Shown piece by piece: positions 166 to 56,160 of a DNA stretch of 64,000 nucleotides. Source of the stretch: Trichoplax adhaerens (taxonomy: Eukaryota > Animalia > Placozoa); the NCBI RefSeq assembly GCF_000150275.1, contig NW_002060962.1:372001-436000 (forward strand). The letters run 5' to 3'. A program made the position numbers and the translations under genes. The notes under the pieces were generated by a model. The model saw only the letters and a list, made by a program, of their open reading frames with translations, made no database searches and was not told where the DNA came from. Position 1 is the first letter of the stretch, and each line of letters begins with the position of its first letter.

Positions 166-3100
166 CTAAGGTTCCGGAGGAGGTGGCGGAGGTGGTGGTG
201 GTGCCTGTTGCTATAGAGTAAGTACAGTAAATTCACACATCAGAAGTTTCAACATGTCAGTTTAATGACAAATAATAGTTGTAATAATCTTTTACCCATG
301 GAGCGGTACCAGGAGGTGGAGGAGCAGTGACATTTTTTGAGTCAAATCCAGGCGCTGCAGCACCAGGTTGAAGCCAAGGCGCACCACCTGGATTAGGAAC
401 ATTGGCTAGAATTAAATTAAAAGAGTAACTTCTAAGTATTTAATTAAAGTTATAATTGTCCAATAACTACGATTTATAGAGGTATGGTATTATTAAATTT
501 AGAAACAGTGATGATAAAATTCAATGCGGTTGTAGCAAAAACTTAAAAAGATTTCATCTAATCTTCATAAATCAGCATCTGAACCTTGTTGCCAAGGAGC
601 TGATGGTACAGCCGATGGATTTGTGTCCGAAGCAGCTAAACCAGGAGGAGGGGGGTTACCGCTTGGTACTGAAGAGAATAATGTACCGTATATTATTTTC
701 ATTTGATAAAGACAATAAATAAGTAAACGATTATGTAGCAAATGTTGATCTACCTGATGGACCATGTGGTAGAGGTTGTTGCATTGGTGGATATCCCCAA
801 GGTTGATAACCACCCCACGTAGGTTGAGGCATCATCGGATATCCATACGGAGGGAAAGCACCAAAACCGGGAGGACCAGGGGCCTAAGAAAAAGGTTGTA
901 GTTATGATTATATTAGAGAAAATATTCTTAAAATGGATAATATCGTGTCATATTAATATGTCTATATTATGAGAAAGAATTGTACCATAGGCATATTTGT
1001 CATAGGCATCCCTGAAGCTGGAGGCATTGGATGAGGACCACCACTAATAGGTACAGATGTCGGAGCAGGAGCAGGAGCAGGAACAGGAGCAGGAGCAGGA
1101 GCAGGAGCTGGAGGTGCAGGAACTGCTGTGGTAGAAGTAGTAGTTGCAATAGTAGCAGTTGTGATTACGGTATTAAGATTAGTAGCAGGAGTAGATGTCG
1201 CTGCACTAGTAGTATCTGGTTTCTTAGTAATTTCTTCAGGGGCAGAGCCTTCACCCAGTTCGGCCATCAATGATAGGTACTGTGATAATCAATTACCATC
1301 AAGTTACGCCTTTCTTTAGTGGTTAAGTTGGATATCATTGCAAGTAAACTAATAACTACCAAATCGAGAGTATCACTACTTCAACAGATGGCCAATGTAA
1401 CTATAATAATCGAGTACGTTACTAAACTTAAAGGTACCCATACCTCATTATCCATTTTTTCTCTATCGATAACAGGTTCTACTGGCTCGTTACCACCTTC
1501 TTCGTTACTTCTAATTAAACCAGTAAGGAAGTGTAACATATCTAGAATATCGTGTAATATATTCTTTATAGAATAATAAAACATATTTATTTCTTACTTT
1601 TGTTTACAATCAGTTGCTACATGGCCAATACCACCGCATATGGTACATGCGATAGTACTTGTAAGATTTCGCTGCTCTGGGCATTCCCAGTAACGATGCC
1701 CAGTGGCTCCACAATTTCGACATCTATGTTGAATCATAAATAGAGTCAGGGATAATCAAACAATAAGTTTAGCTTGTAAGAAGTTATGCATACCTATTCA
1801 AATCTTCTTCTCTCAGTGTGCCATTTAATTGAGCTAGTTCACGAAGTTGCATACGTTTTAGATCATTTTGTCCTTCCGGAGAATCGATACCGCACTGAAT
1901 TATTTCATGTATCTGTAGTTAGATAATAAAATTTAGTTACAATGATAGTAGTGATTCTAGTAGTATATCTCCCAATCAGAAGTATGGTCAAAAATTTCGC
2001 AGACATATTGACGTAAAATATGTATCACTACTGGTTCATGACTACCTTGTTAACGGCAATCTTAACACCGTCAGCGGTTGAGCCAGTAATCAGTGCATGT
2101 AAAGCTTCATCTTCACCAGAATTCGGCTACAACAATAAATAAGTAGCATAAGTACATAATATCTAATTTATTCTCTAACGATTACTGAATCATAATAAAG
2201 CCTCTAAAACTTGTTTGTCTTAACCAAGTGCATGTTAAGTCATTGCATCATACTGTAACAGTCTTGATTGCCTTACATATAATTGTGCTTTTCCTTCCTT
2301 TGTTGAGCCTTTTCCTCGTATCATTATCTTAGAGTTGCTCTAAAACAAATAAAGAAAATAGAAAACATTAAGCAGAAAGTAAGTCGTATAATTAGGCATA
2401 TGTGGTGGTAATATTACTTCTTTTTCTATTCTCTTCAAGGTGTTTCCACTATGAAAAAGTAATATTGAATACATGATTAGTCCAAACAATAAAAGATTGA
2501 CAACCTCAGCAAAGTCATTAATTTAATAGTCTTATTAAAGTTACCGAGGTCCAATAAGTAGTCCGATAAAGTTAATAGTAGGATAGTCATCCTGTGGGAT
2601 CATCACCTTATCTTGGACCTTAATAGCCGGCGGCCTGAATGAATGATGTGAATCAGTTAATAAAATGAGGTCAAAATTTTGTACTTGAATCATATTGTAT
2701 TGAAATCAATAAAATGTGTCATTACTAAAATAGATTTATACCGATAATCTACAGGAGGTTTATAATTTGAATTCAAGGCCGATAATTCTTGTATGGCACT
2801 ATGCCTTTCTTCTTCGAGTTTCTTCCTTACACGAAATTCTCTGGTATTTAATCTTTTACCATCATTACTATAAAGTGGTTCCGGCGACGGGGAACTGTTT
2901 ATTCAATGAAGATTTTTCAATTGATTATAACAATTGATGCATTTCGTATTTCATAATAAAAAGGGATAAATAAGCGTTTAATTCTATTACCGATCTTCTG
3001 GGTTTTCCGGAATACCTAAATCGCCAGTTCTTAACATTTTCGTAACTTCTTCTATCCTATATTGTACTATAAGCATGTCGTAATAAGATAAGTATTTACG

Positions 3101-4484
3101 TCGTGGGTAAATATCCATGTCTAATCTGAATAAACTGAAGGTATATCCAGCAAGCCATATTCTGATGTGTACTACCTTGTATTGTAGTATTACTTTTCAC
3201 ATTAATACTCGATTACGAAAGCAAAAACTAGCATGCCCTTTATGGAGTAACATTATGTATGCATCTATATGCTACATTCATTGACGTAGAGGAGCAGTAA
3301 AACACTTCTAAAGTTCTAGACGTCCTCGATAATATGTATCAAGGCACAATTAAACGAGATATGGGAGTAGGGTAGACATAATGTAGTAAGAATCATTATT
3401 ACAGATGTCCATTAATACCGTCACCAAAATTTATGAATGAACTTAGAGATCATTCATACGCAAGCTGTATGCGTAAATGTAGGTTAACTTAGATAATGAT
3501 GACTTTAGAATTAACAATGGTGTCAGACATTCGCAGACATTACACCAGCTGCAAATTCCCTTCAAATAATTTTAATGATAGCCATTATGTAGAAGTCTAC
3601 CAACATGATCCTAAGTTATAGATGAGTACTAACTAAATAGAATGGTAAAGTTTTCAATCTGGAAATTCATCCATTACAATTTCACTTAGAATGTATTGGA
3701 AAGAGTAGTAAAAGAGCGTATGCAATTTCATTTGAACAACTCGAGCACTCTATTCTATCTACTCTTTTAATTTCAACGCTTTATTATGCAGCACGGTATG
3801 GCATATCATGGCAGTGAAGTGAATTATTACTAGGATATTTGCTAGAACAACAACTAATCCGTAACTGGTCTTTCTACTTTGAGAGGGCATGAATAGAATG
3901 ATATCATAACAAAGTAGTTGCACTTGTAGAATGAGGTAGATAGGCCTATCGTATTGTACGGGTTGGAGTAAGTTGTAGAGAAATTTGGACAGATACTCAC
4001 ACAAGTATTGCTTTTTCTGATCCTCTGTAGCATTTGTCGGGATGACTGTGGGCATGCCTGGTAGAATACTTTTCGATTCTTCGGAAGCCCAACGACTTCT
4101 ACGTTTTCTTTTTCTTTGAGCGTCTCCAGTTCCTAATATTATAATAATAGAAAAGAGATGATTTCAAGATGGGGCCCACTCGTTATAGTACAGTATAGTG
4201 TGATCCATCTGAAGCTATAGCATTGTCAATGATCTCAATCAAGTTACTGTACAATTTGGCAAACATTACAACTATTTGTGCCTGCAATGGATTGGAGCAT
4301 AGATCAACAATTTCAATGAAAGAATCATTTCTTGACTGTGTATCAAGTATCGCCTAGAGTCGATAGCTATACAAGGGACTACAAGACTGGTGTCGTCTCC
4401 ACTGTACATACCATCATCTGCTGAACGCTTGTATTGGATATCGTCGTTATTATTACCGTTGCTACCTTGGATAACAGCGCTCAT
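166..4484 (-). CDS. SF1: Splicing factor 1 / branchpoint-binding protein, 16 exons, ~557 aa. Exons: 4484-4412, 4132-4001, 3066-2991, 2894-2742, 2634-2545, 2448-2418, 2339-2277, 2126-2046, 1912-1794, 1723-1598, 1510-1444, 1279-986, 883-754, 668-585, 405-296, 210-166
   Basis: Manual splicing at GT-AG with consistent phases gives [25 protein letters not shown]2 ([27 protein letters not shown]...KIMIRGKGS...[19 protein letters not shown]), two CCHC knuckles ([28 protein letters not shown]), [13 protein letters not shown] and a Pro-rich tail. The first exon and the last three exons are less certain. Confidence 0.95.
1062..1110. repeat. Coding hexamer repeat (GCAGGA)n encoding a (Pro-Ala)n linker in SF1 exon 12
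   Basis: ggagcaggagcaggagcaggaacaggagcaggagcaggagcaggagc; the minus strand reads [17 protein letters not shown]. Confidence 0.85.
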
Positions 4485-15368: not shown

Positions 15369-16340
15369 TCATTTTAGACCTGTTAACTCTTCACTGATAT
15401 CCCAGAGTTTGTTCCCTGCTTCCTCATCGAGAGCGTGATCTTGTAATTTTTTAATCTGACAGTCCACAAAGTACTGTCCAGTAATTCTTTCAACTTCCTC
15501 TGAAACAGCAAGGTGTATCGTCGTTTGGGCACCTTCATAACTTGATTTGAAAAATATAAATGCAATGGGGTAAATGACCAGCCTGGCCCAAAAATACTTT
15601 AAAATATTTACACCTCGCCATATTTCAGTTCTAACAGCTCCAGGATGTAAAGCGTTTACCGTAACATGGGTGTCCTTTAATTTTTTGGCCAGTGAACGTG
15701 TAAATAATATGTTAGCTAATTTGCTTTGAGAATAGACATTAAAATTGTTAAAATTTTTCTCGTTTTGGATATCATCAAAATTGATTGATTTTACAAAAGC
15801 ATAGACCGAAGAGGCAACATTAACAATCCTACTTGAAGCGCTTTCCTTAATTTTAGGGAGTAAAAGGTTGGTGAGTAGGAAATGACCAAAATGGTTGACA
15901 CCCATGATCATTTCCAGCCCATCCTCAGTCAATTTTCTATCGCAAGCTAGTCCAGCGTTATTAACCAATATATCAACGCTTTTTTCATTGGTTATAATCT
16001 CCTGAGTAAACTTGCGAATGGATTTAAATGAGGCTAGATTAAGATGCATATAGATAACGTTGTTGTTACCAGTAGCGCGGCGAATATCTTCCATGGCAGC
16101 TTCACCTCGGGATTGATCTCTGCAGGCTAAAATAACGCGACCACCACGTCGAGCAAAATCTTGAGCAGCTTCTCTCCCAATACCACAATTGGCACCAGTG
16201 ACAATGACAACTTTGCCTTCCAGGCTGGCTCGGCTACGACATACTCCACCAGCGTAATACCTTTTAACGACATATAAACCCGTAGCAAGTGATACTGCAA
16301 CAGCAGTCCAAATTTGATGGCCAGACAACGATATCTCCAT
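15369..16340 (-). CDS. Retinol dehydrogenase 11/12/13/14-like short-chain dehydrogenase/reductase, intronless, 323 aa
   Basis: N-terminal hydrophobic anchor, TGANCGIG cofactor motif, DILVNNAG, NHFGHFLLTNLLL, YSQSK catalytic motif, ALHPGAVRT, GAQT, LWDISEEL. Confidence 0.92.
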   Translation of the reverse strand: MEISLSGHQIWTAVAVSLATGLYVVKRYYAGGVCRSRASLEGKVVIVTGANCGIGREAAQDFARRGGRVILACRDQSRGEAAMEDIRRATGNNNVIYMHLNLASFKSIRKFTQEIITNEKSVDILVNNAGLACDRKLTEDGLEMIMGVNHFGHFLLTNLLLPKIKESASSRIVNVASSVYAFVKSINFDDIQNEKNFNNFNVYSQSKLANILFTRSLAKKLKDTHVTVNALHPGAVRTEIWRGVNILKYFWARLVIYPIAFIFFKSSYEGAQTTIHLAVSEEVERITGQYFVDCQIKKLQDHALDEEAGNKLWDISEELTGLK

Positions 16341-46230: not shown

Positions 46231-47130
46231 TTAAATATTGTATAAATAGAATTCGTAAACATTAAATAATCTGTGACGTTGCATTTTGGTGCAATCAGCT
46301 ACCGAACTAAATCGTTGAAAAACAATCTTAGCTCTAGCTAATGTCTGTGATAAATACGTTCTCGATTTAATGTATGGTAGAAGTATTCCATAAGGTCCAC
46401 TTTGAGAGATTACGCTTCTAAATAATCCTTTACTGGAAGGCATCACTAGATAACAGATAGCAGATGAACCTCCTGCGGAATTTCCAGCTATCGTAATAAA
46501 GTTTGGGTTACCTCCAAAACTTTCGATATTTTCCTTTACCCATTGTTATGCTAAACTATGATTTTGTAGACTAAGATTCGCTGGAATATTTCTTTGATTA
46601 CTACCTTCTTCGCCGGATGACATAAAACTTAAAACATTTATTCGATAATTAATAGTAACTACGACGATACCTTAATTAGCAGCTAATATTTGACCAGGCC
46701 ATTATGCTCCTGAACGATTGCATATCCGCCACCGAGGATGAAGACTAACACGGACATATTCCTAGCTATAGAAGGATTCGAGATAAAGATATTTAGAGAT
46801 AGACAATCTTCATTAATTCGACTCCTAAGTGATTTTGGATCAGTAAAAAGGACTGGAAGTTACTAGAGGCAACTGTATTGATATTCTGTAGCGTTTAAGA
46901 CGCCTCTCCAAGATTCTACTGGCACTGGTGGTTTAAATCGTAATTGATTAATGGGTAGTTGGGCGCAAGGAATACCAAGATAAGTGAATTGAGTTAAATC
47001 ACTAGTTAGAACTGTTTCCTCGCAATATAGCCGTTCTTTGTAGGAATGATAAGATGAGCATTAGAAATAGGGCATACTAAACCCACAATTGCAATAAAAG
47101 ATGCCAGCAATGGAGATATTTTAGGGCCAT
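46231..47130 (-). pseudogene. Carboxylesterase pseudogene of the copy 6/7 subfamily; 5' half only
   Basis: Recognisable fragments LGIPCAQLPINQLRFKPPVPV, QYSCL**LPV, NEDCL, SLA*QWVK and GNSAGG...MPSSKGLF, with frameshifts and in-frame stops. No 3' half or exon 2 was found. Confidence 0.88.
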
Positions 47131-52909: not shown

Positions 52910-55900
52910 TCAATTAAAGATAACTGTAGTTGTTCTTCGCCTGATCTTTCGAGCAAAGATAAGCAATCCAACCGTTGTTATAACTGCAACACAGCTTAAG
53001 GCAATAATGATGATACTGTAGAAGGACAGTTGGCCTTGATTATTCTGATCCATATCATCAGTTTTTATTGGTACTTGACTCGGAACTGAAGCTCGTGAAT
53101 GTTCATAATCAATTTGTTTCTCCAAATAGCCGTTCCAAAAATTGTTACCATTAGCATTATGTAATGTGATTATTCTCGATGGGGAATTGACACAATAATA
53201 TTGCTTGGTTGATTTTTTATATCGTGGCCAAATGAGATGGTTGCCCATTTCAGCGTTAGGCGATCTAGTTCAAGAATAAATGCAAACTTTTAAAACGATA
53301 CATGATACTGTAATTTAATAGCTAAAAACTGTTTCATAGCATTTTATAACTATAGCTATTAATTGATGATTAGAATACTGCAACAATCTTATCTTATCTC
53401 ACTGTAGTAACTTGTGATCAAGTAGATTTATAGTTATCGTATTTAATACCTTAGATCTTTCAAATGCTATTTAAATTTAAAGCTAATACCGCCAAATTTG
53501 ATTTATTAACAACATAATTCGTAACAGTTTAAATTTTAAATAATGACTGTCTTATGACAAATCTATTATTTCTACCGCAATGATTCTAACTCGAAGTTGG
53601 TTTGTAATCTTTATATTTTTTTATAGTTTTTACTTTATATAGTAGATTTACATTCGAGTGATTCTCCCGGAATTTAATGTAGATCGATTTACTTTATAGG
53701 CGTATGGGTTTTAAGTGGTCATTTTACATTCATTGCTTCATTAAGTATTCGTAACCGTCTGTTTTAAATGTTCTCTATGTACTACTAGTATAAATTTTGT
53801 AAATAGTTTTCCTTTTAAACTATTTTATTGTACTATTGAAGAGCAACGCCTAGTTTCTACTCGTAAATCTTAAATTACAGTATTTGTTTTATAAATTGTT
53901 TATAAATGTGAAGAGTAGAATTTTTAGCAGATTTTCCATTTCAAATCTTTCTTTTCGTCATTTGAGAGCAAAATTAAACTTGCTAAAGTATAATAACTGA
54001 CTGAGGATGGATGTTGCAACTGGTTGTAGAGATCGATGAGACTTTAGACTTAAAAAATTAGAGGTAGACGCTTGATAATGTAAATTATATTTAACTCACT
54101 CATCAGCGAATCTATAGGCTACTATATCTTTTAGCTGTTTAACTATCGAGCATATATATATCGAATATGAATGCGTACAAAATTTTGCGCTCGTTACTCT
54201 CACGTGATTAATCCTTTATTAATTTTCAATAGAAAATGTGAACCTTCATCGTCTATAAATCCTAATTACTACCGAAGAATATTAAGATCGCGTATACATG
54301 TCATCCAAAAAAATATGCTCGATAGACTTGTTGGTTGATTTCTAGAATTGTTTCAGAATAGATCTTGCGTGCATCAATTCGTTATGTAGCTGAAAGAGGA
54401 TCATCCATCTCCTTTATTTACAGCCCTTAAGCTAATTATTCGTTTATAAAAGAGCATCTAGCTGCGAAATGATATCATTGTACTCAATATTCTAGTATCC
54501 TAAGAACTCCTCTTTGATATTGATGATGAACGTTAAAACGAAATATAAGATCAATTTACTTTGGATAGATTGAAAAGCACCTAAGAGAAGTTCATTCAGC
54601 AATTAAGGTTACATTACCATTGCACTACTCTATGAAAAATCAATATACTACCTACCCATGATGGATAAAATTGCCCCATAATGACATTACTTCAAGGCTA
54701 ACTTGACGATCAGTCATAGTATAGGCGGTAGCATAGTAATTGGGTTTGGCGACGGGATAACCGAAAACATATGGTATCTCCATTGTATTACTAACGCCTA
54801 ACTGTGAAGGATAATATGGATCGGGATTGCTGCCACGATAGGAATATAAGTAGACGAAAGTACTGGTAGATGAATCTCTAGAATAAATGTTGGCGATATA
54901 CTCTGTTGGTGCGGCGTATAAGCTATCGGTTATTAATTTGTCAGCTTGTCGTAAATTGAATATTGGCGATGAAACATTTTGCCAGTTAGTATATTCATGA
55001 ATGATTGCTCGTCGTATTGCGTGATTGAATTCATCAAATAAAGTATCGATTAAGAGTAGGAAGATATCACGATGTATGCCTTGATTTTGATGTGGTAATT
55101 GTTGTATCAATTTAGCGCTATCATTTAAGTTATAACCAACGATTAAATTGACTTTCTTAAAATTGCCTTGATCAAGTAGAATTCTTGGGTGATCTCGTAT
55201 CAGTACACCATCGACTACATATTTAAAAAATCGCCAATATTGTTGGGTTAAAACTTTTTGACCTTGGAAAAGTTTCCGAGTGCTTAAGCGTTGTAAGCAA
55301 TTTACTTGTTGAGTAACGGTATGATTTTGACCCAGACATCCAACTTCTGCAACAAATAGACGAAAGATAGATCGAGCTTTATGGATATTAGACTCAATAG
55401 TATGTACCATACGTACATTGCCACTCTGTAGAATTAAATTATGGATATAATTATAACTTGATGGGATAAGGGTATGCAATTGAGCAGCAGTAGCACCTAA
55501 GCCATCGCCACCGACTGTTACTGCTCTAGGATTGCCACCAAAGTGATCAATATTGTCTTGTACCCAGCGTAGAGCAACTTGTTGATCAAGTAGAGCAATA
55601 TTAGCTGGAATTTGACGACCATGACTTTTTAATTCAGCTGTTGTTAGAAAACCGAAAACTCCTAAACGATAATTGAAGGTAACAACGACTACATTAGCTT
55701 GACTTGCTAACGTTGTGGCCATCCATCGACTACCACTTCCTTCTGTCGACGATGTTCCGTCAATCCAAACAAAAACAGGCAATTTATCTGTCTTATTTAA
55801 TGATGGTGTAAAAACATTTAAATACAGGCAGTCTTCATGGATATTAGCTTGAGCTGTAGTTGGATTAGTCCACGGAATTGGTGTTGGTTGAATACAGGAT

Positions 55901-56160
55901 GGCTTATATAAACGGGCATCGTAGCGTCGAATTCTTCCACTACTTTGAGGAATAGGTTGTGGTGCTTGAAAGCGGTATTTCCCTAATGGAGGTATAGCAT
56001 AAGGTAAACCAAGAAAGAATGATACCTGCTTACCATTGATTATTCCACTTCTACCGATAACATCGCCATAATTTGTCGTGACTATAACGCTAGAAAATGA
56101 TTGTGTTATTAACGAGTTAATAACGATGGAGAAGAGGATAAAAAAACTCGTTAGTTTCAT
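52910..56160 (-). CDS. Catalytically inactive carboxylesterase-fold membrane protein, neuroligin/CLAM-like (exons 56160-54656, 53264-52910; ~619 aa)
   Basis: Fold motifs are intact (GLPYA, EDCLYLNVF, NYRLG, DQQVALRWVQDNI..FGGNP), but the elbow is GDGLG, the oxyanion loop is WIDGTSS and the His motif is GVSNTME. TM followed by RKIRRRTTTVIFN. Confidence 0.88.

What the first reader, a model, noticed from the sequence alone, without database searches (positions are those of the whole stretch)
52910..56160. Intact pseudoenzyme: nucleophile, catalytic His and oxyanion loop all lost
Seen: GxSAG->GDGLG (55495-55509), His->Asn (GVSNTME, ~54788), HGGG->DGTS and acid motif NDG->NDS. The ~619-codon frame, both disulfide pairs, signal peptide and TM are nonetheless preserved, unlike the decayed pseudogene at 46-47 kb. 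Established: neuroligins carry Gly at the nucleophile position. Inference: a selected non-enzymatic adhesion, ligand-binding or regulatory subunit, either related to neuroligins or convergent on them.
Basis: partly seen in the sequence, partly recalled or inferred. Interest (0 to 1): 0.8.

Follow-up and report, generated by a model that had tools for sequence, protein, structure and literature searches.

The report
Conserved dead esterase on placozoan membrane
One gene in a long row of membrane-bound esterase genes of the simple animal Trichoplax has lost its catalytic residues yet has been kept intact by selection; it resembles the synaptic protein neuroligin only by independent (convergent) change, which is a common fate in this enzyme family.

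Summary
The minus-strand gene 56160..52910 (two exons, 619 codons; 626 with an optional 21-nt micro-exon) encodes signal peptide, type-B carboxylesterase domain (Pfam E 1e-112), short stalk, one TM helix and a 14-residue tail. Ser->Gly (GDGLG), His->Asn, HGG->DGT and NDG->NDS are real; the acid Asp itself is kept. All eight sibling genes in the window keep the triad.

It is not decaying. A 67%-identical ortholog from another placozoan carries the same losses. dN/dS is about 0.17, the same as catalytically intact siblings in the same species pair. Between Trichoplax H1 and H2, exon 1 has 2 synonymous changes where about 13 are expected.

It is not a neuroligin. All placozoan copies form one clade (100/100), the target is nested among its neighbours, and the AU test rejects a clade with neuroligins (p 0.0003). 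The tail is 14 residues with no PDZ ligand, and the SP-esterase-TM layout is shared by the active siblings.

It is also not unique: three other paralogs in the genome have damaged triads.

Verdict: a selected, lineage-specific, non-catalytic cholinesterase-like membrane protein that converged on neuroligins. Its partner or ligand is unknown. It is a new member of a known kind, of moderate-low interest.

The parts
54656..56160 (-). Exon 1 (codons 1-501 plus 2 bases of codon 502): signal peptide and most of the carboxylesterase type-B domain
   Evidence: ORF; PF00135 E 9e-112; GT donor at 54655-54654 read; the ortholog L001 has a GT donor at the same codon position
56092..56160 (-). Predicted signal peptide (residues 1-23, MKLTSFFILFSIVINSLITQSFS)
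   Evidence: Hydrophobic N-terminal helix 2-18 in the model; the COesterase profile match starts at residue 24; no dedicated signal-peptide predictor was run
55750..55761 (-). Oxyanion-hole loop DGTS in place of HGG(G/S) (residues 134-137)
   Evidence: the ortholog has DAAS
55495..55509 (-). Nucleophile elbow GDGLG (residues 218-222): Ser220->Gly, Ala221->Leu
   Evidence: identical in ortholog P0002
55117..55125 (-). Acid turn N346-D347-S348: acid Asp retained, following Gly->Ser, creating an N-glycosylation sequon
   Evidence: the same NDS is in the ortholog
54787..54789 (-). Catalytic His replaced by Asn458 (GVSNTMEI)
   Evidence: the ortholog has GVTNTIEI
55828..55896 (-). First disulfide loop (Omega/Cys-loop), Cys89 to Cys111
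   Evidence: Cys columns conserved in 21 of 22 family rows; low pLDDT at residues 100-103, so the loop is probably flexible
55297..55338 (-). Second disulfide pair, Cys275 to Cys288
55189..55242 (-). Residues 307-324 (QYWRFFKYVVDGVLIRD plus one residue), equivalent of the AChE acyl-pocket loop; 17 of 17 residues of the motif are identical in the ortholog although the loop varies among siblings
   Evidence: window identity 0.93 against 0.62 in sibling pairs; positional equivalence from the AChE alignment
53265..54655 (-). Intron (1391 nt, GT..AG, phase 2); shows no detectable similarity to the ortholog's intron
54560..54580 (-). Optional 21-nt micro-exon (adds CFSIYPK) used in the public Trichoplax sp. 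H2 model RDD37464.1; flanked by AG and GT
   Evidence: pLDDT 62-70 around it; no counterpart found in the L001 intron
52910..53264 (-). Exon 2: end of the esterase domain (helix alpha-10), short stalk, TM, 14-residue basic tail, stop TGA at 52910-52912
   Evidence: PF00135 covers residues 24-552 of the full-length H2 model; homologous second exons lie behind the sibling genes
52952..53017 (-). Transmembrane helix SIIIIALSCVAVITTVGLLIFA
   Evidence: Hydropathy 2.88; helix 585-625 in the model

Best explanation
Shown: this is an intact two-exon (optionally three-exon) gene of Trichoplax adhaerens. It encodes a type-I membrane protein whose ectodomain is a well-folded type-B carboxylesterase/cholinesterase-like domain. 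The domain lacks the nucleophile Ser, the catalytic His and two of the three oxyanion-hole positions. It arose by duplication inside a placozoan-specific tandem expansion of membrane-anchored esterases. It lost its catalytic residues before two deep placozoan lineages split, and since then it has been under purifying selection as strong as that on its active siblings. Its likeness to neuroligin (Gly at the nucleophile, TM anchor) is convergent.

Inferred: it acts on the cell surface by binding rather than by hydrolysis. The old substrate gorge and its rim are the likeliest binding site, because the segments that build the former active centre stay as conserved as in active siblings, and the acyl-pocket loop more so. 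What it binds is unknown; it could be a small ester or lipid-like ligand or a protein partner. With only a 14-residue tail it cannot signal like a neuroligin. Any output would have to come through ligand capture or presentation, or through partners in the same or an opposing membrane.
For: Gene model and domain. AlphaFold model of the H2 ortholog: pLDDT 91, pTM 0.87. It matches BChE, AChE and neuroligin structures equally well, TM 0.84-0.89.

Catalytic losses: PDB alignments and the family table. Six of the 8 catalytic-apparatus positions are changed, against 5 of the 70 other conserved positions.

Conservation: ortholog P0002 on L001 is 67% identical, has the same four losses and a donor site at the same position. 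NG86 dN is 0.227, dS 1.32, omega 0.17 (bootstrap 0.12-0.24). The active sibling pair L011/P0136 from the same sample gives 0.15, and L003/P0152 gives 0.16. The introns cannot be aligned. Between H1 and H2, exon 1 has 2 substitutions in 1505 sites, both synonymous, against 0.86% in introns and flanks (P 2e-4).

Origin: in the careful IQ-TREE the placozoan clade has 100/100 support and the neuroligin clade (fish, amphioxus, acorn worm) has 100/100. The AU test against target plus neuroligins gives p 0.00032.

Architecture shared with siblings. Pocket segments conserved.
Against: No expression data could be read here. The only hint is that the evidence-based (Maker plus transcriptome) H2 annotation includes the gene with a micro-exon (PMC6057997).

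dS is close to saturation, so omega is rough. Only one distant ortholog is known, and its contig ends inside the intron, so conservation of the stalk, TM and tail is untested beyond H1 versus H2.

The binding-pocket inference rests on a two-sequence conservation profile and on positional equivalence to AChE. No coordinates were available to inspect the gorge. No partner or ligand is identified.
Confidence: 0.65

Rival explanations
1. It is a non-catalytic partner subunit. It pairs through the family's four-helix bundle (helices alpha3(7,8) and alpha10) with one or more active sibling esterases from the same array, and modulates their folding, trafficking, surface retention or activity.
For: It sits inside a co-oriented tandem array of about 19 esterase genes and has the same SP-domain-TM-short-tail layout as they do. 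Type-B esterases, neuroligins and the thyroglobulin ChEL domain all dimerise through that bundle (PMC5943944). Helices 380-389 and 546-567 are present in the model. Pseudoenzymes often regulate their active paralogs (general knowledge).
Against: It is only 30-39% identical to any sibling. Helix 380-389 is not unusually conserved, 6 of 10 residues against the ortholog. None of the known dead members of this family works this way. No co-expression or complex data exist. A dimer could not be modelled because two ectodomains exceed the 1000-residue limit.
Confidence: 0.2
2. It is a functional analogue or relative of neuroligin: a trans-cellular adhesion molecule that binds the placozoan neurexin LNS domain.
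For: Gly at the nucleophile position, as in neuroligins. It has a membrane anchor. Neurexin-like proteins are reported in Placozoa (PMC11294457, PMC10084454), and many LamG-domain loci exist in this genome. Vertebrate neuroligins score about as well as cholinesterases against it.
Against: It is nested in the placozoan clade (100/100), and the AU test rejects a clade with neuroligins. The tail is 14 residues ending in VIFN, with no PDZ ligand, and the stalk is short. The TM and layout are shared with the active siblings. Reviews list neuroligins as absent from Placozoa (PMC2824662, PMC10084454). Neuroligins keep the His that is lost here.
Confidence: 0.05
3. It is still an enzyme, with a different nucleophile or chemistry (for example using Asp219 or Asp347), or a very weak esterase.
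For: The acid Asp347 and an acidic residue before the nucleophile position (Asp219) are retained, and the former active-centre segments are conserved.
Against: The nucleophile, the general base His and the backbone-amide oxyanion motif are all changed at once, and stably so in the ortholog. I know of no precedent in PF00135 for catalysis without Ser and His.
Confidence: 0.04
4. It is a young or slowly decaying pseudogene whose open frame survives by chance.
For: Catalytic residues are lost. A clearly decayed copy lies 8 kb away, at window 46342-46985.
Against: The 499-codon frame is open in two lineages whose synonymous sites are nearly saturated and whose introns cannot be aligned. Omega is 0.17. 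There are no non-synonymous changes in exon 1 between H1 and H2. Sixty-seven of 78 family-conserved positions are kept.
Confidence: 0.02

Closest known systems
Neuroligins (NLGN1-4; amphioxus and hemichordate neuroligin-4-like)
   Same: Type-I membrane protein with a cholinesterase-like ectodomain. Gly replaces the nucleophile Ser. The first two disulfides are kept. Fold match TM about 0.85.
   Different: It lies in a separate clade. Neuroligins keep His and the acid Glu and most of HGG (FIHGGSY), whereas the target loses His and HGG. Vertebrate neuroligins have a long stalk and a tail of about 124-130 residues ending in the PDZ ligand TTRV; the target tail is 14 residues ending in VIFN. Neurexin binding is untested.
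Insect/nematode cholinesterase-like adhesion molecules (gliotactin, neurotactin, glutactin) and the thyroglobulin ChEL domain
   Same: Independent cases of a type-B esterase fold that lost its triad and is used for protein binding, adhesion or chaperoning (PMC5943944, PMC10084454).
   Different: They come from different lineages and were not in the tree here. They carry long cytoplasmic or extra domains (or are secreted or fused), whereas this protein has almost no cytoplasmic part. No function has been shown for it.
Its own active siblings: placozoan membrane-anchored type-B carboxylesterases (e.g. P0007 = RDD37473.1, named 'Cholinesterase [Trichoplax sp. H2]')
   Same: Same clade, same tandem array, same intron position, and same layout of signal peptide, esterase domain, short stalk, TM and 9-15-residue tail.
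   Different: The siblings keep HGG, GxSxG, the acid followed by Gly, and His. The target has lost them. Identity is only 30-39%.

Membership tests
Carboxylesterase type B / cholinesterase-like fold (Pfam PF00135) | Significant full-length match to the family profile and an alpha/beta-hydrolase fold | tested here: met
   E 9e-112 for exon 1. E 1.5e-115 over profile positions 2-515 for the full-length H2 model. pLDDT 91, and TM 0.84-0.89 to BChE, AChE and NLGN structures.
Carboxylesterase type B / cholinesterase-like fold (Pfam PF00135) | Two conserved N-terminal disulfide loops | tested here: met
   Cys89/Cys111 and Cys275/Cys288 lie in the conserved Cys columns.
Catalytically competent carboxyl/cholinesterase | Ser nucleophile in GxSxG | tested here: not met
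   GDGLG; Ser220->Gly.
Catalytically competent carboxyl/cholinesterase | Catalytic His | tested here: not met
   Asn458.
Catalytically competent carboxyl/cholinesterase | Oxyanion-hole motif HGG plus Ala after Ser | tested here: not met
   D134-G135-T136 and Leu221.
Catalytically competent carboxyl/cholinesterase | Acidic triad member | tested here: met
   Asp347 is retained, as in the siblings.
Catalytically competent carboxyl/cholinesterase | Measured hydrolytic activity | not testable with these tools
   Needs recombinant protein and an assay.
Neuroligin | Non-catalytic ChE-like ectodomain with Gly at the nucleophile position | tested here: met
   GDGLG, against FGSGAGA in neuroligins.
Neuroligin | Membership of the neuroligin clade (orthology) | tested here: not met
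   The target lies inside the placozoan clade (100/100). Forcing it with 4 neuroligins costs 88.7 lnL, p-AU 0.00032. Caveat: no cnidarian or protostome neuroligins were in the set.
Neuroligin | [quoted passage not shown] | tested here: not met
   The tail is about 14 residues and ends in VIFN. The fish neuroligins in the set have 124-130 residues ending in TTRV.
Neuroligin | Ca2+-dependent binding of the neurexin LNS domain | not tested
   LamG loci exist in the genome, but no contiguous, referable neurexin LNS sequence could be obtained, so no complex job was sent.
Cholinesterase-like adhesion molecules (CLAMs; a functional class, not a clade) | Catalytically dead ChE-like extracellular domain on a membrane-anchored or matrix protein | tested here: met
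Cholinesterase-like adhesion molecules (CLAMs; a functional class, not a clade) | Demonstrated heterophilic adhesion or partner binding | not testable with these tools
   Needs binding or aggregation assays.

The most novel reading that the evidence does not exclude
In an animal without neurons or synapses, a dead esterase that arose independently of neuroligins has taken on the same job. It would be a membrane-tethered cholinesterase-like ectodomain that binds a neurexin-like LNS protein, or another surface partner, to mediate cell-cell recognition. That would be a full functional convergence on the neurexin-neuroligin adhesion pair.
Probability: 0.05. Interest if true: 0.8.

Novelty: new member of a known kind. 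Interest (0 to 1): 0.35.

Why it matters
Non-catalytic cholinesterase-like proteins are classic cases of enzymes turned into binding modules. Examples are neuroligins, gliotactin, neurotactin, glutactin and the thyroglobulin ChEL domain. All well-studied cases are bilaterian, and reviews list neuroligins as absent from Placozoa.

This gene shows the same transition, down to Gly at the nucleophile, happening independently inside a placozoan-specific expansion of membrane-bound esterases. It has then been maintained over a deep placozoan split. It is a clean natural example of convergent pseudoenzyme evolution.

It also gives two cautions. Public names such as 'Cholinesterase' and BLAST-level 'neuroligin homolog' calls in early-branching animals should not be read as orthology. 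And such losses are frequent in this family: at least three more paralogs in this genome have damaged triads, and no function is known. So the finding is a useful annotation and a modest evolutionary note, not a surprise.

Tried and rejected
(1) A search with the C-terminal part (residues 470-626 of the H2 model) for spliced orthologs or transcripts found only the gene's own cluster. This gives no independent expression or tail-conservation evidence.

(2) The careful 77-row tree did not finish in two 300-s runs. The quick tree is reported, and a 45-row careful tree plus AU test replaced it. Rows left out of the 45-row set: L014 (long branch), P0151, P0185, P0163 and redundant orthologs and esterases.

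(3) Complex prediction was not used. Two ectodomains (2 x about 547 residues) exceed the 1000-residue limit, so neither a homodimer nor a sibling heterodimer could be modelled. For neurexin, the LamG loci are split over exons and no contiguous referable LNS sequence was at hand. The report does not claim binding.

(4) Fold search does not discriminate: BChE, AChE and neuroligins score alike.

(5) Literature: no paper in the library deals with this gene. The supplements of PMC11294457 are not held. Lenfant et al. 2014 on cholinesterase and neuroligin origins is cited by others but is not in the library.

(6) The search of earlier findings returned nothing, by place or by words.

(7) Joined-exon step: exons were searched separately by reference. 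No search, fold or look-up was made with a joined model of the window. The public H2 protein P0121, which differs at one residue, stood in for the full-length product. In one search a script concatenated the exon coordinates in memory only, to count codons and compare with P0121; nothing was printed, saved or sent.

(8) The idea that the TM and signal peptide mark a neuroligin-like innovation was rejected, because the active siblings have them too.
Full report
**What is there**

The window is eukaryotic, with GC about 0.28-0.43. It is G000:C1395:372001-436000 of a 105.6-Mb assembly with 1414 contigs, whose largest contig is 13.26 Mb. These figures match those given for the Trichoplax adhaerens reference in PMC6057997. 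The best named relatives are Trichoplax sp. H2 proteins. I take it for T. adhaerens, not human.

On the minus strand a 502-codon ORF (54652-56160) matches Pfam COesterase at E 9e-112. It ends at a GT donor (..CAT CAT GG|GTAGGT, 54655). An AG acceptor at 53265 opens a second exon (53264-52910) in phase, with junction codon GG|A = Gly. This gives ..NFIHHG|SPNAEMGNHLIWPRY.., which aligns with the family's ..TG(D/N)PN..WP(R/K)Y... The product is 619 aa.

The public H2 model RDD37464.1 (P0121, 626 aa, auto-named 'Cholinesterase') is the same gene. It adds a 21-nt AG/GT-flanked micro-exon at 54560-54580 (CFSIYPK) and otherwise differs by one residue, V601I.

Exons were searched separately by reference, and no search used a joined window model. 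P0121 stood in for the full-length protein. A script joined the exon coordinates in memory only, to count codons.

**Observation**

Alignments to solved AChE, BChE and neuroligin-4 and to 20 paralogs of the same genome confirm the following:
- Nucleophile elbow GDGLG, against GESAG or GxSxG.
- Asn458 in place of His.
- D134-G-T136-S, against HGG(G/S).
- N346-D347-S348, against (N/D/Q)DG.

The acid Asp is kept. The G348S change creates an N-D-S sequon, and the ortholog has it too. Cys89-Cys111 and Cys275-Cys288 are kept.

The AlphaFold model of P0121 is confident (pLDDT 91.1, pTM 0.87). It shows an N-terminal hydrophobic helix, the full alpha/beta fold, the alpha-10 helix (546-567), a low-confidence stalk and a TM helix. 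Hydropathy puts the TM at 593-611 of P0121, leaving about 14 cytoplasmic residues (RKIRRRTTTVIFN).

Of 78 positions that are at least 85% conserved in 23 active placozoan paralogs, the target keeps 67. Six of the 11 changes hit the 8 catalytic-apparatus positions (p 4e-5). All eight other esterase genes in the window keep the full apparatus.

**Is it selected?**

Among 1.8 billion cluster representatives there is a single close relative. This is P0002, 500 aa and 67% identical, on a 3-kb genomic Logan contig (SRR30660616; L001). It has a donor site at the same codon position. It carries WIDAASS / GGDGLGG / NLNDSS / GVTNTIEI, that is, the same losses.

Two other paralogs have orthologs in the same sample at the same distance: L011/P0136 at 67.5% and L003/P0152 at 66.9%. 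P0002 is therefore the ortholog from another, deeply diverged placozoan, whose species I could not identify.

Nei-Gojobori estimates over 499 codons give dN 0.227, dS 1.32 and omega 0.17 (bootstrap 0.12-0.24). The catalytically intact L011 pair gives 0.15, L003 gives 0.16 and L009/P0148 gives 0.10. dS is near saturation, so the absolute values are rough, but the comparison within one species pair is fair. The introns share no detectable similarity.

On a short time scale, H1 and H2 differ at 2 of 1505 exon-1 sites, both synonymous. Introns and 3-kb flanks differ at 62 of 7191 sites (0.86%, in line with the genome-wide 99.1% identity in PMC6057997). The Poisson probability is 2e-4.

A truly decayed copy lies at 46342-46985. 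It is truncated and holds five stops, and it shows what relaxation looks like in this array.

**Relation to neuroligins**

By score, neuroligins, cholinesterases and liver carboxylesterases are all about 28-34% identical to the target, and its own siblings 30-39%. The fold search does not discriminate either.

The phylogeny does. In a 77-row quick tree all 29 placozoan sequences form one clade (SH-aLRT 100), with the target and P0002 nested among the window neighbours. In a 45-row careful tree (LG+C20+F+G4) the placozoan clade has 100/100 support. The neuroligin clade, made of fish NLGN2a and NLGN4, Branchiostoma and Ptychodera 'neuroligin-4-like' (names), also has 100/100. Forcing the target and P0002 together with these neuroligins costs 88.7 log-likelihood units, p-AU 0.00032.

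Architecture agrees with this. The SP-esterase-stalk-TM-short-tail layout and the intron position are shared with the active siblings. Placozoan tails are 9-15 residues, whereas the vertebrate neuroligins in the set have 124-130 residues ending in TTRV. Neuroligins also keep the His that is lost here.

Reviews list neuroligins as a eumetazoan/cnidarian-bilaterian gain, not recorded in Placozoa (PMC2824662, PMC10084454). The Ser->Gly change is therefore convergent. One caveat is that no cnidarian or protostome neuroligins were in my set.

**How it most likely works**

Shown: it is a folded, membrane-tethered, extracellular esterase-like domain that cannot run the Ser-His-acid mechanism, and it has been under steady purifying selection since before a deep placozoan split.

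Inferred: it works by binding. The segments that build the former active centre are conserved between the target and its ortholog as well as, or nearly as well as, in active sibling pairs. These are the stretch after the oxyanion loop (131-165), the elbow region (211-245) and the His loop (456-470). The equivalent of the AChE acyl-pocket loop (QYWRFFKYVVDGVLIRD, 307-323) is 17/17 identical, although it varies across the family. This suggests that the pocket or its rim is still used.

The tail is too short for neuroligin-type scaffolding. Output would therefore have to come from ligand capture or presentation, or from partners in cis or trans.

My odds for the function:
- Non-hydrolytic surface binder: about 0.45.
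- Partner subunit of sibling esterases through the four-helix bundle: about 0.2.
- Neurexin-type adhesion: about 0.05.
- Residual or alternative catalysis: about 0.04.
- Decay: about 0.02.
- The remainder is open.

**Context and novelty**

The gene is one of about 19 co-oriented esterase genes at C1395:381-475 kb, with more on C1414 and C1385. It is the only dead copy in the window but not in the genome:
- L014 (C1414:12.59 Mb) has Asp at the nucleophile, no His and no second disulfide.
- L008 lacks the acid and His regions.
- L003 has His->Lys, conserved in its ortholog.

Loss of catalysis is thus recurrent in this family, as it is in bilaterians (CLAMs and the thyroglobulin ChEL domain; PMC5943944).

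The protein is already in public databases, truncated in H1 and named 'Cholinesterase' in H2. I found no paper that treats it.

It is a new member of a known kind: an independent placozoan cholinesterase-like pseudoenzyme. Interest is moderate-low. It would rise sharply only if it proved to bind a neurexin-like partner.

Noticed in passing
window 46342-46985 (-): Decayed esterase fragment. It matches only profile positions 27-234 and holds five in-frame stops, and it lies between intact array members.
   Followed up: partly
window 15369-16340 (-): A 323-aa ORF inside the esterase array is a short-chain dehydrogenase (PF00106, E 1.5e-39), not an esterase.
   Followed up: partly
L014 = G000:C1414:12590755-12592197 (-): A solitary, very divergent paralog (25% identity, long branch). 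It has Asp at the nucleophile position (GYDHG), no His and no second disulfide pair. It is a second, more extreme candidate pseudoenzyme in an open 506-codon frame.
   Followed up: partly
L008 = G000:C1395:469924-471318 (-); L003 = G000:C1395:445246-446688 (-): Two more array members have damaged triads. L008 lacks the acid and His regions. L003 has His->Lys (GVAKTMEL), and the same Lys is in its ortholog P0152 from two Logan samples, with omega 0.16.
   Followed up: partly
L005 = G000:C1395:450201-454900, ORF 2513-4369 (-): One family member (619 aa, near-identical to the H2 protein P0007) is encoded without the otherwise universal phase-2 intron. This points to intron loss or a retrocopy.
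   Followed up: no
window 54560-54580 (-): A 21-nt micro-exon (CFSIYPK), flanked by AG and GT, is used in the evidence-based H2 gene model. It adds a Cys, falls in a lower-confidence loop (pLDDT 62-70), and has no counterpart in the ortholog's intron. Whether it is constitutive, alternative or an annotation artefact is open.
   Followed up: partly
window 55117-55125 (-): The Gly->Ser change after the retained acid Asp347 creates the N-glycosylation sequon N346-D347-S348, which is conserved in the ortholog. A glycan next to the old acid turn is possible but untested.
   Followed up: no
whole family (window and L002-L014): The public name 'Cholinesterase' for these placozoan proteins looks unfounded. 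In the AChE alignment the Omega-loop segment holding the choline-binding Trp (..EMW..) is an insertion that is absent from the target, and the siblings' Cys-loops are similarly short.
   Followed up: partly
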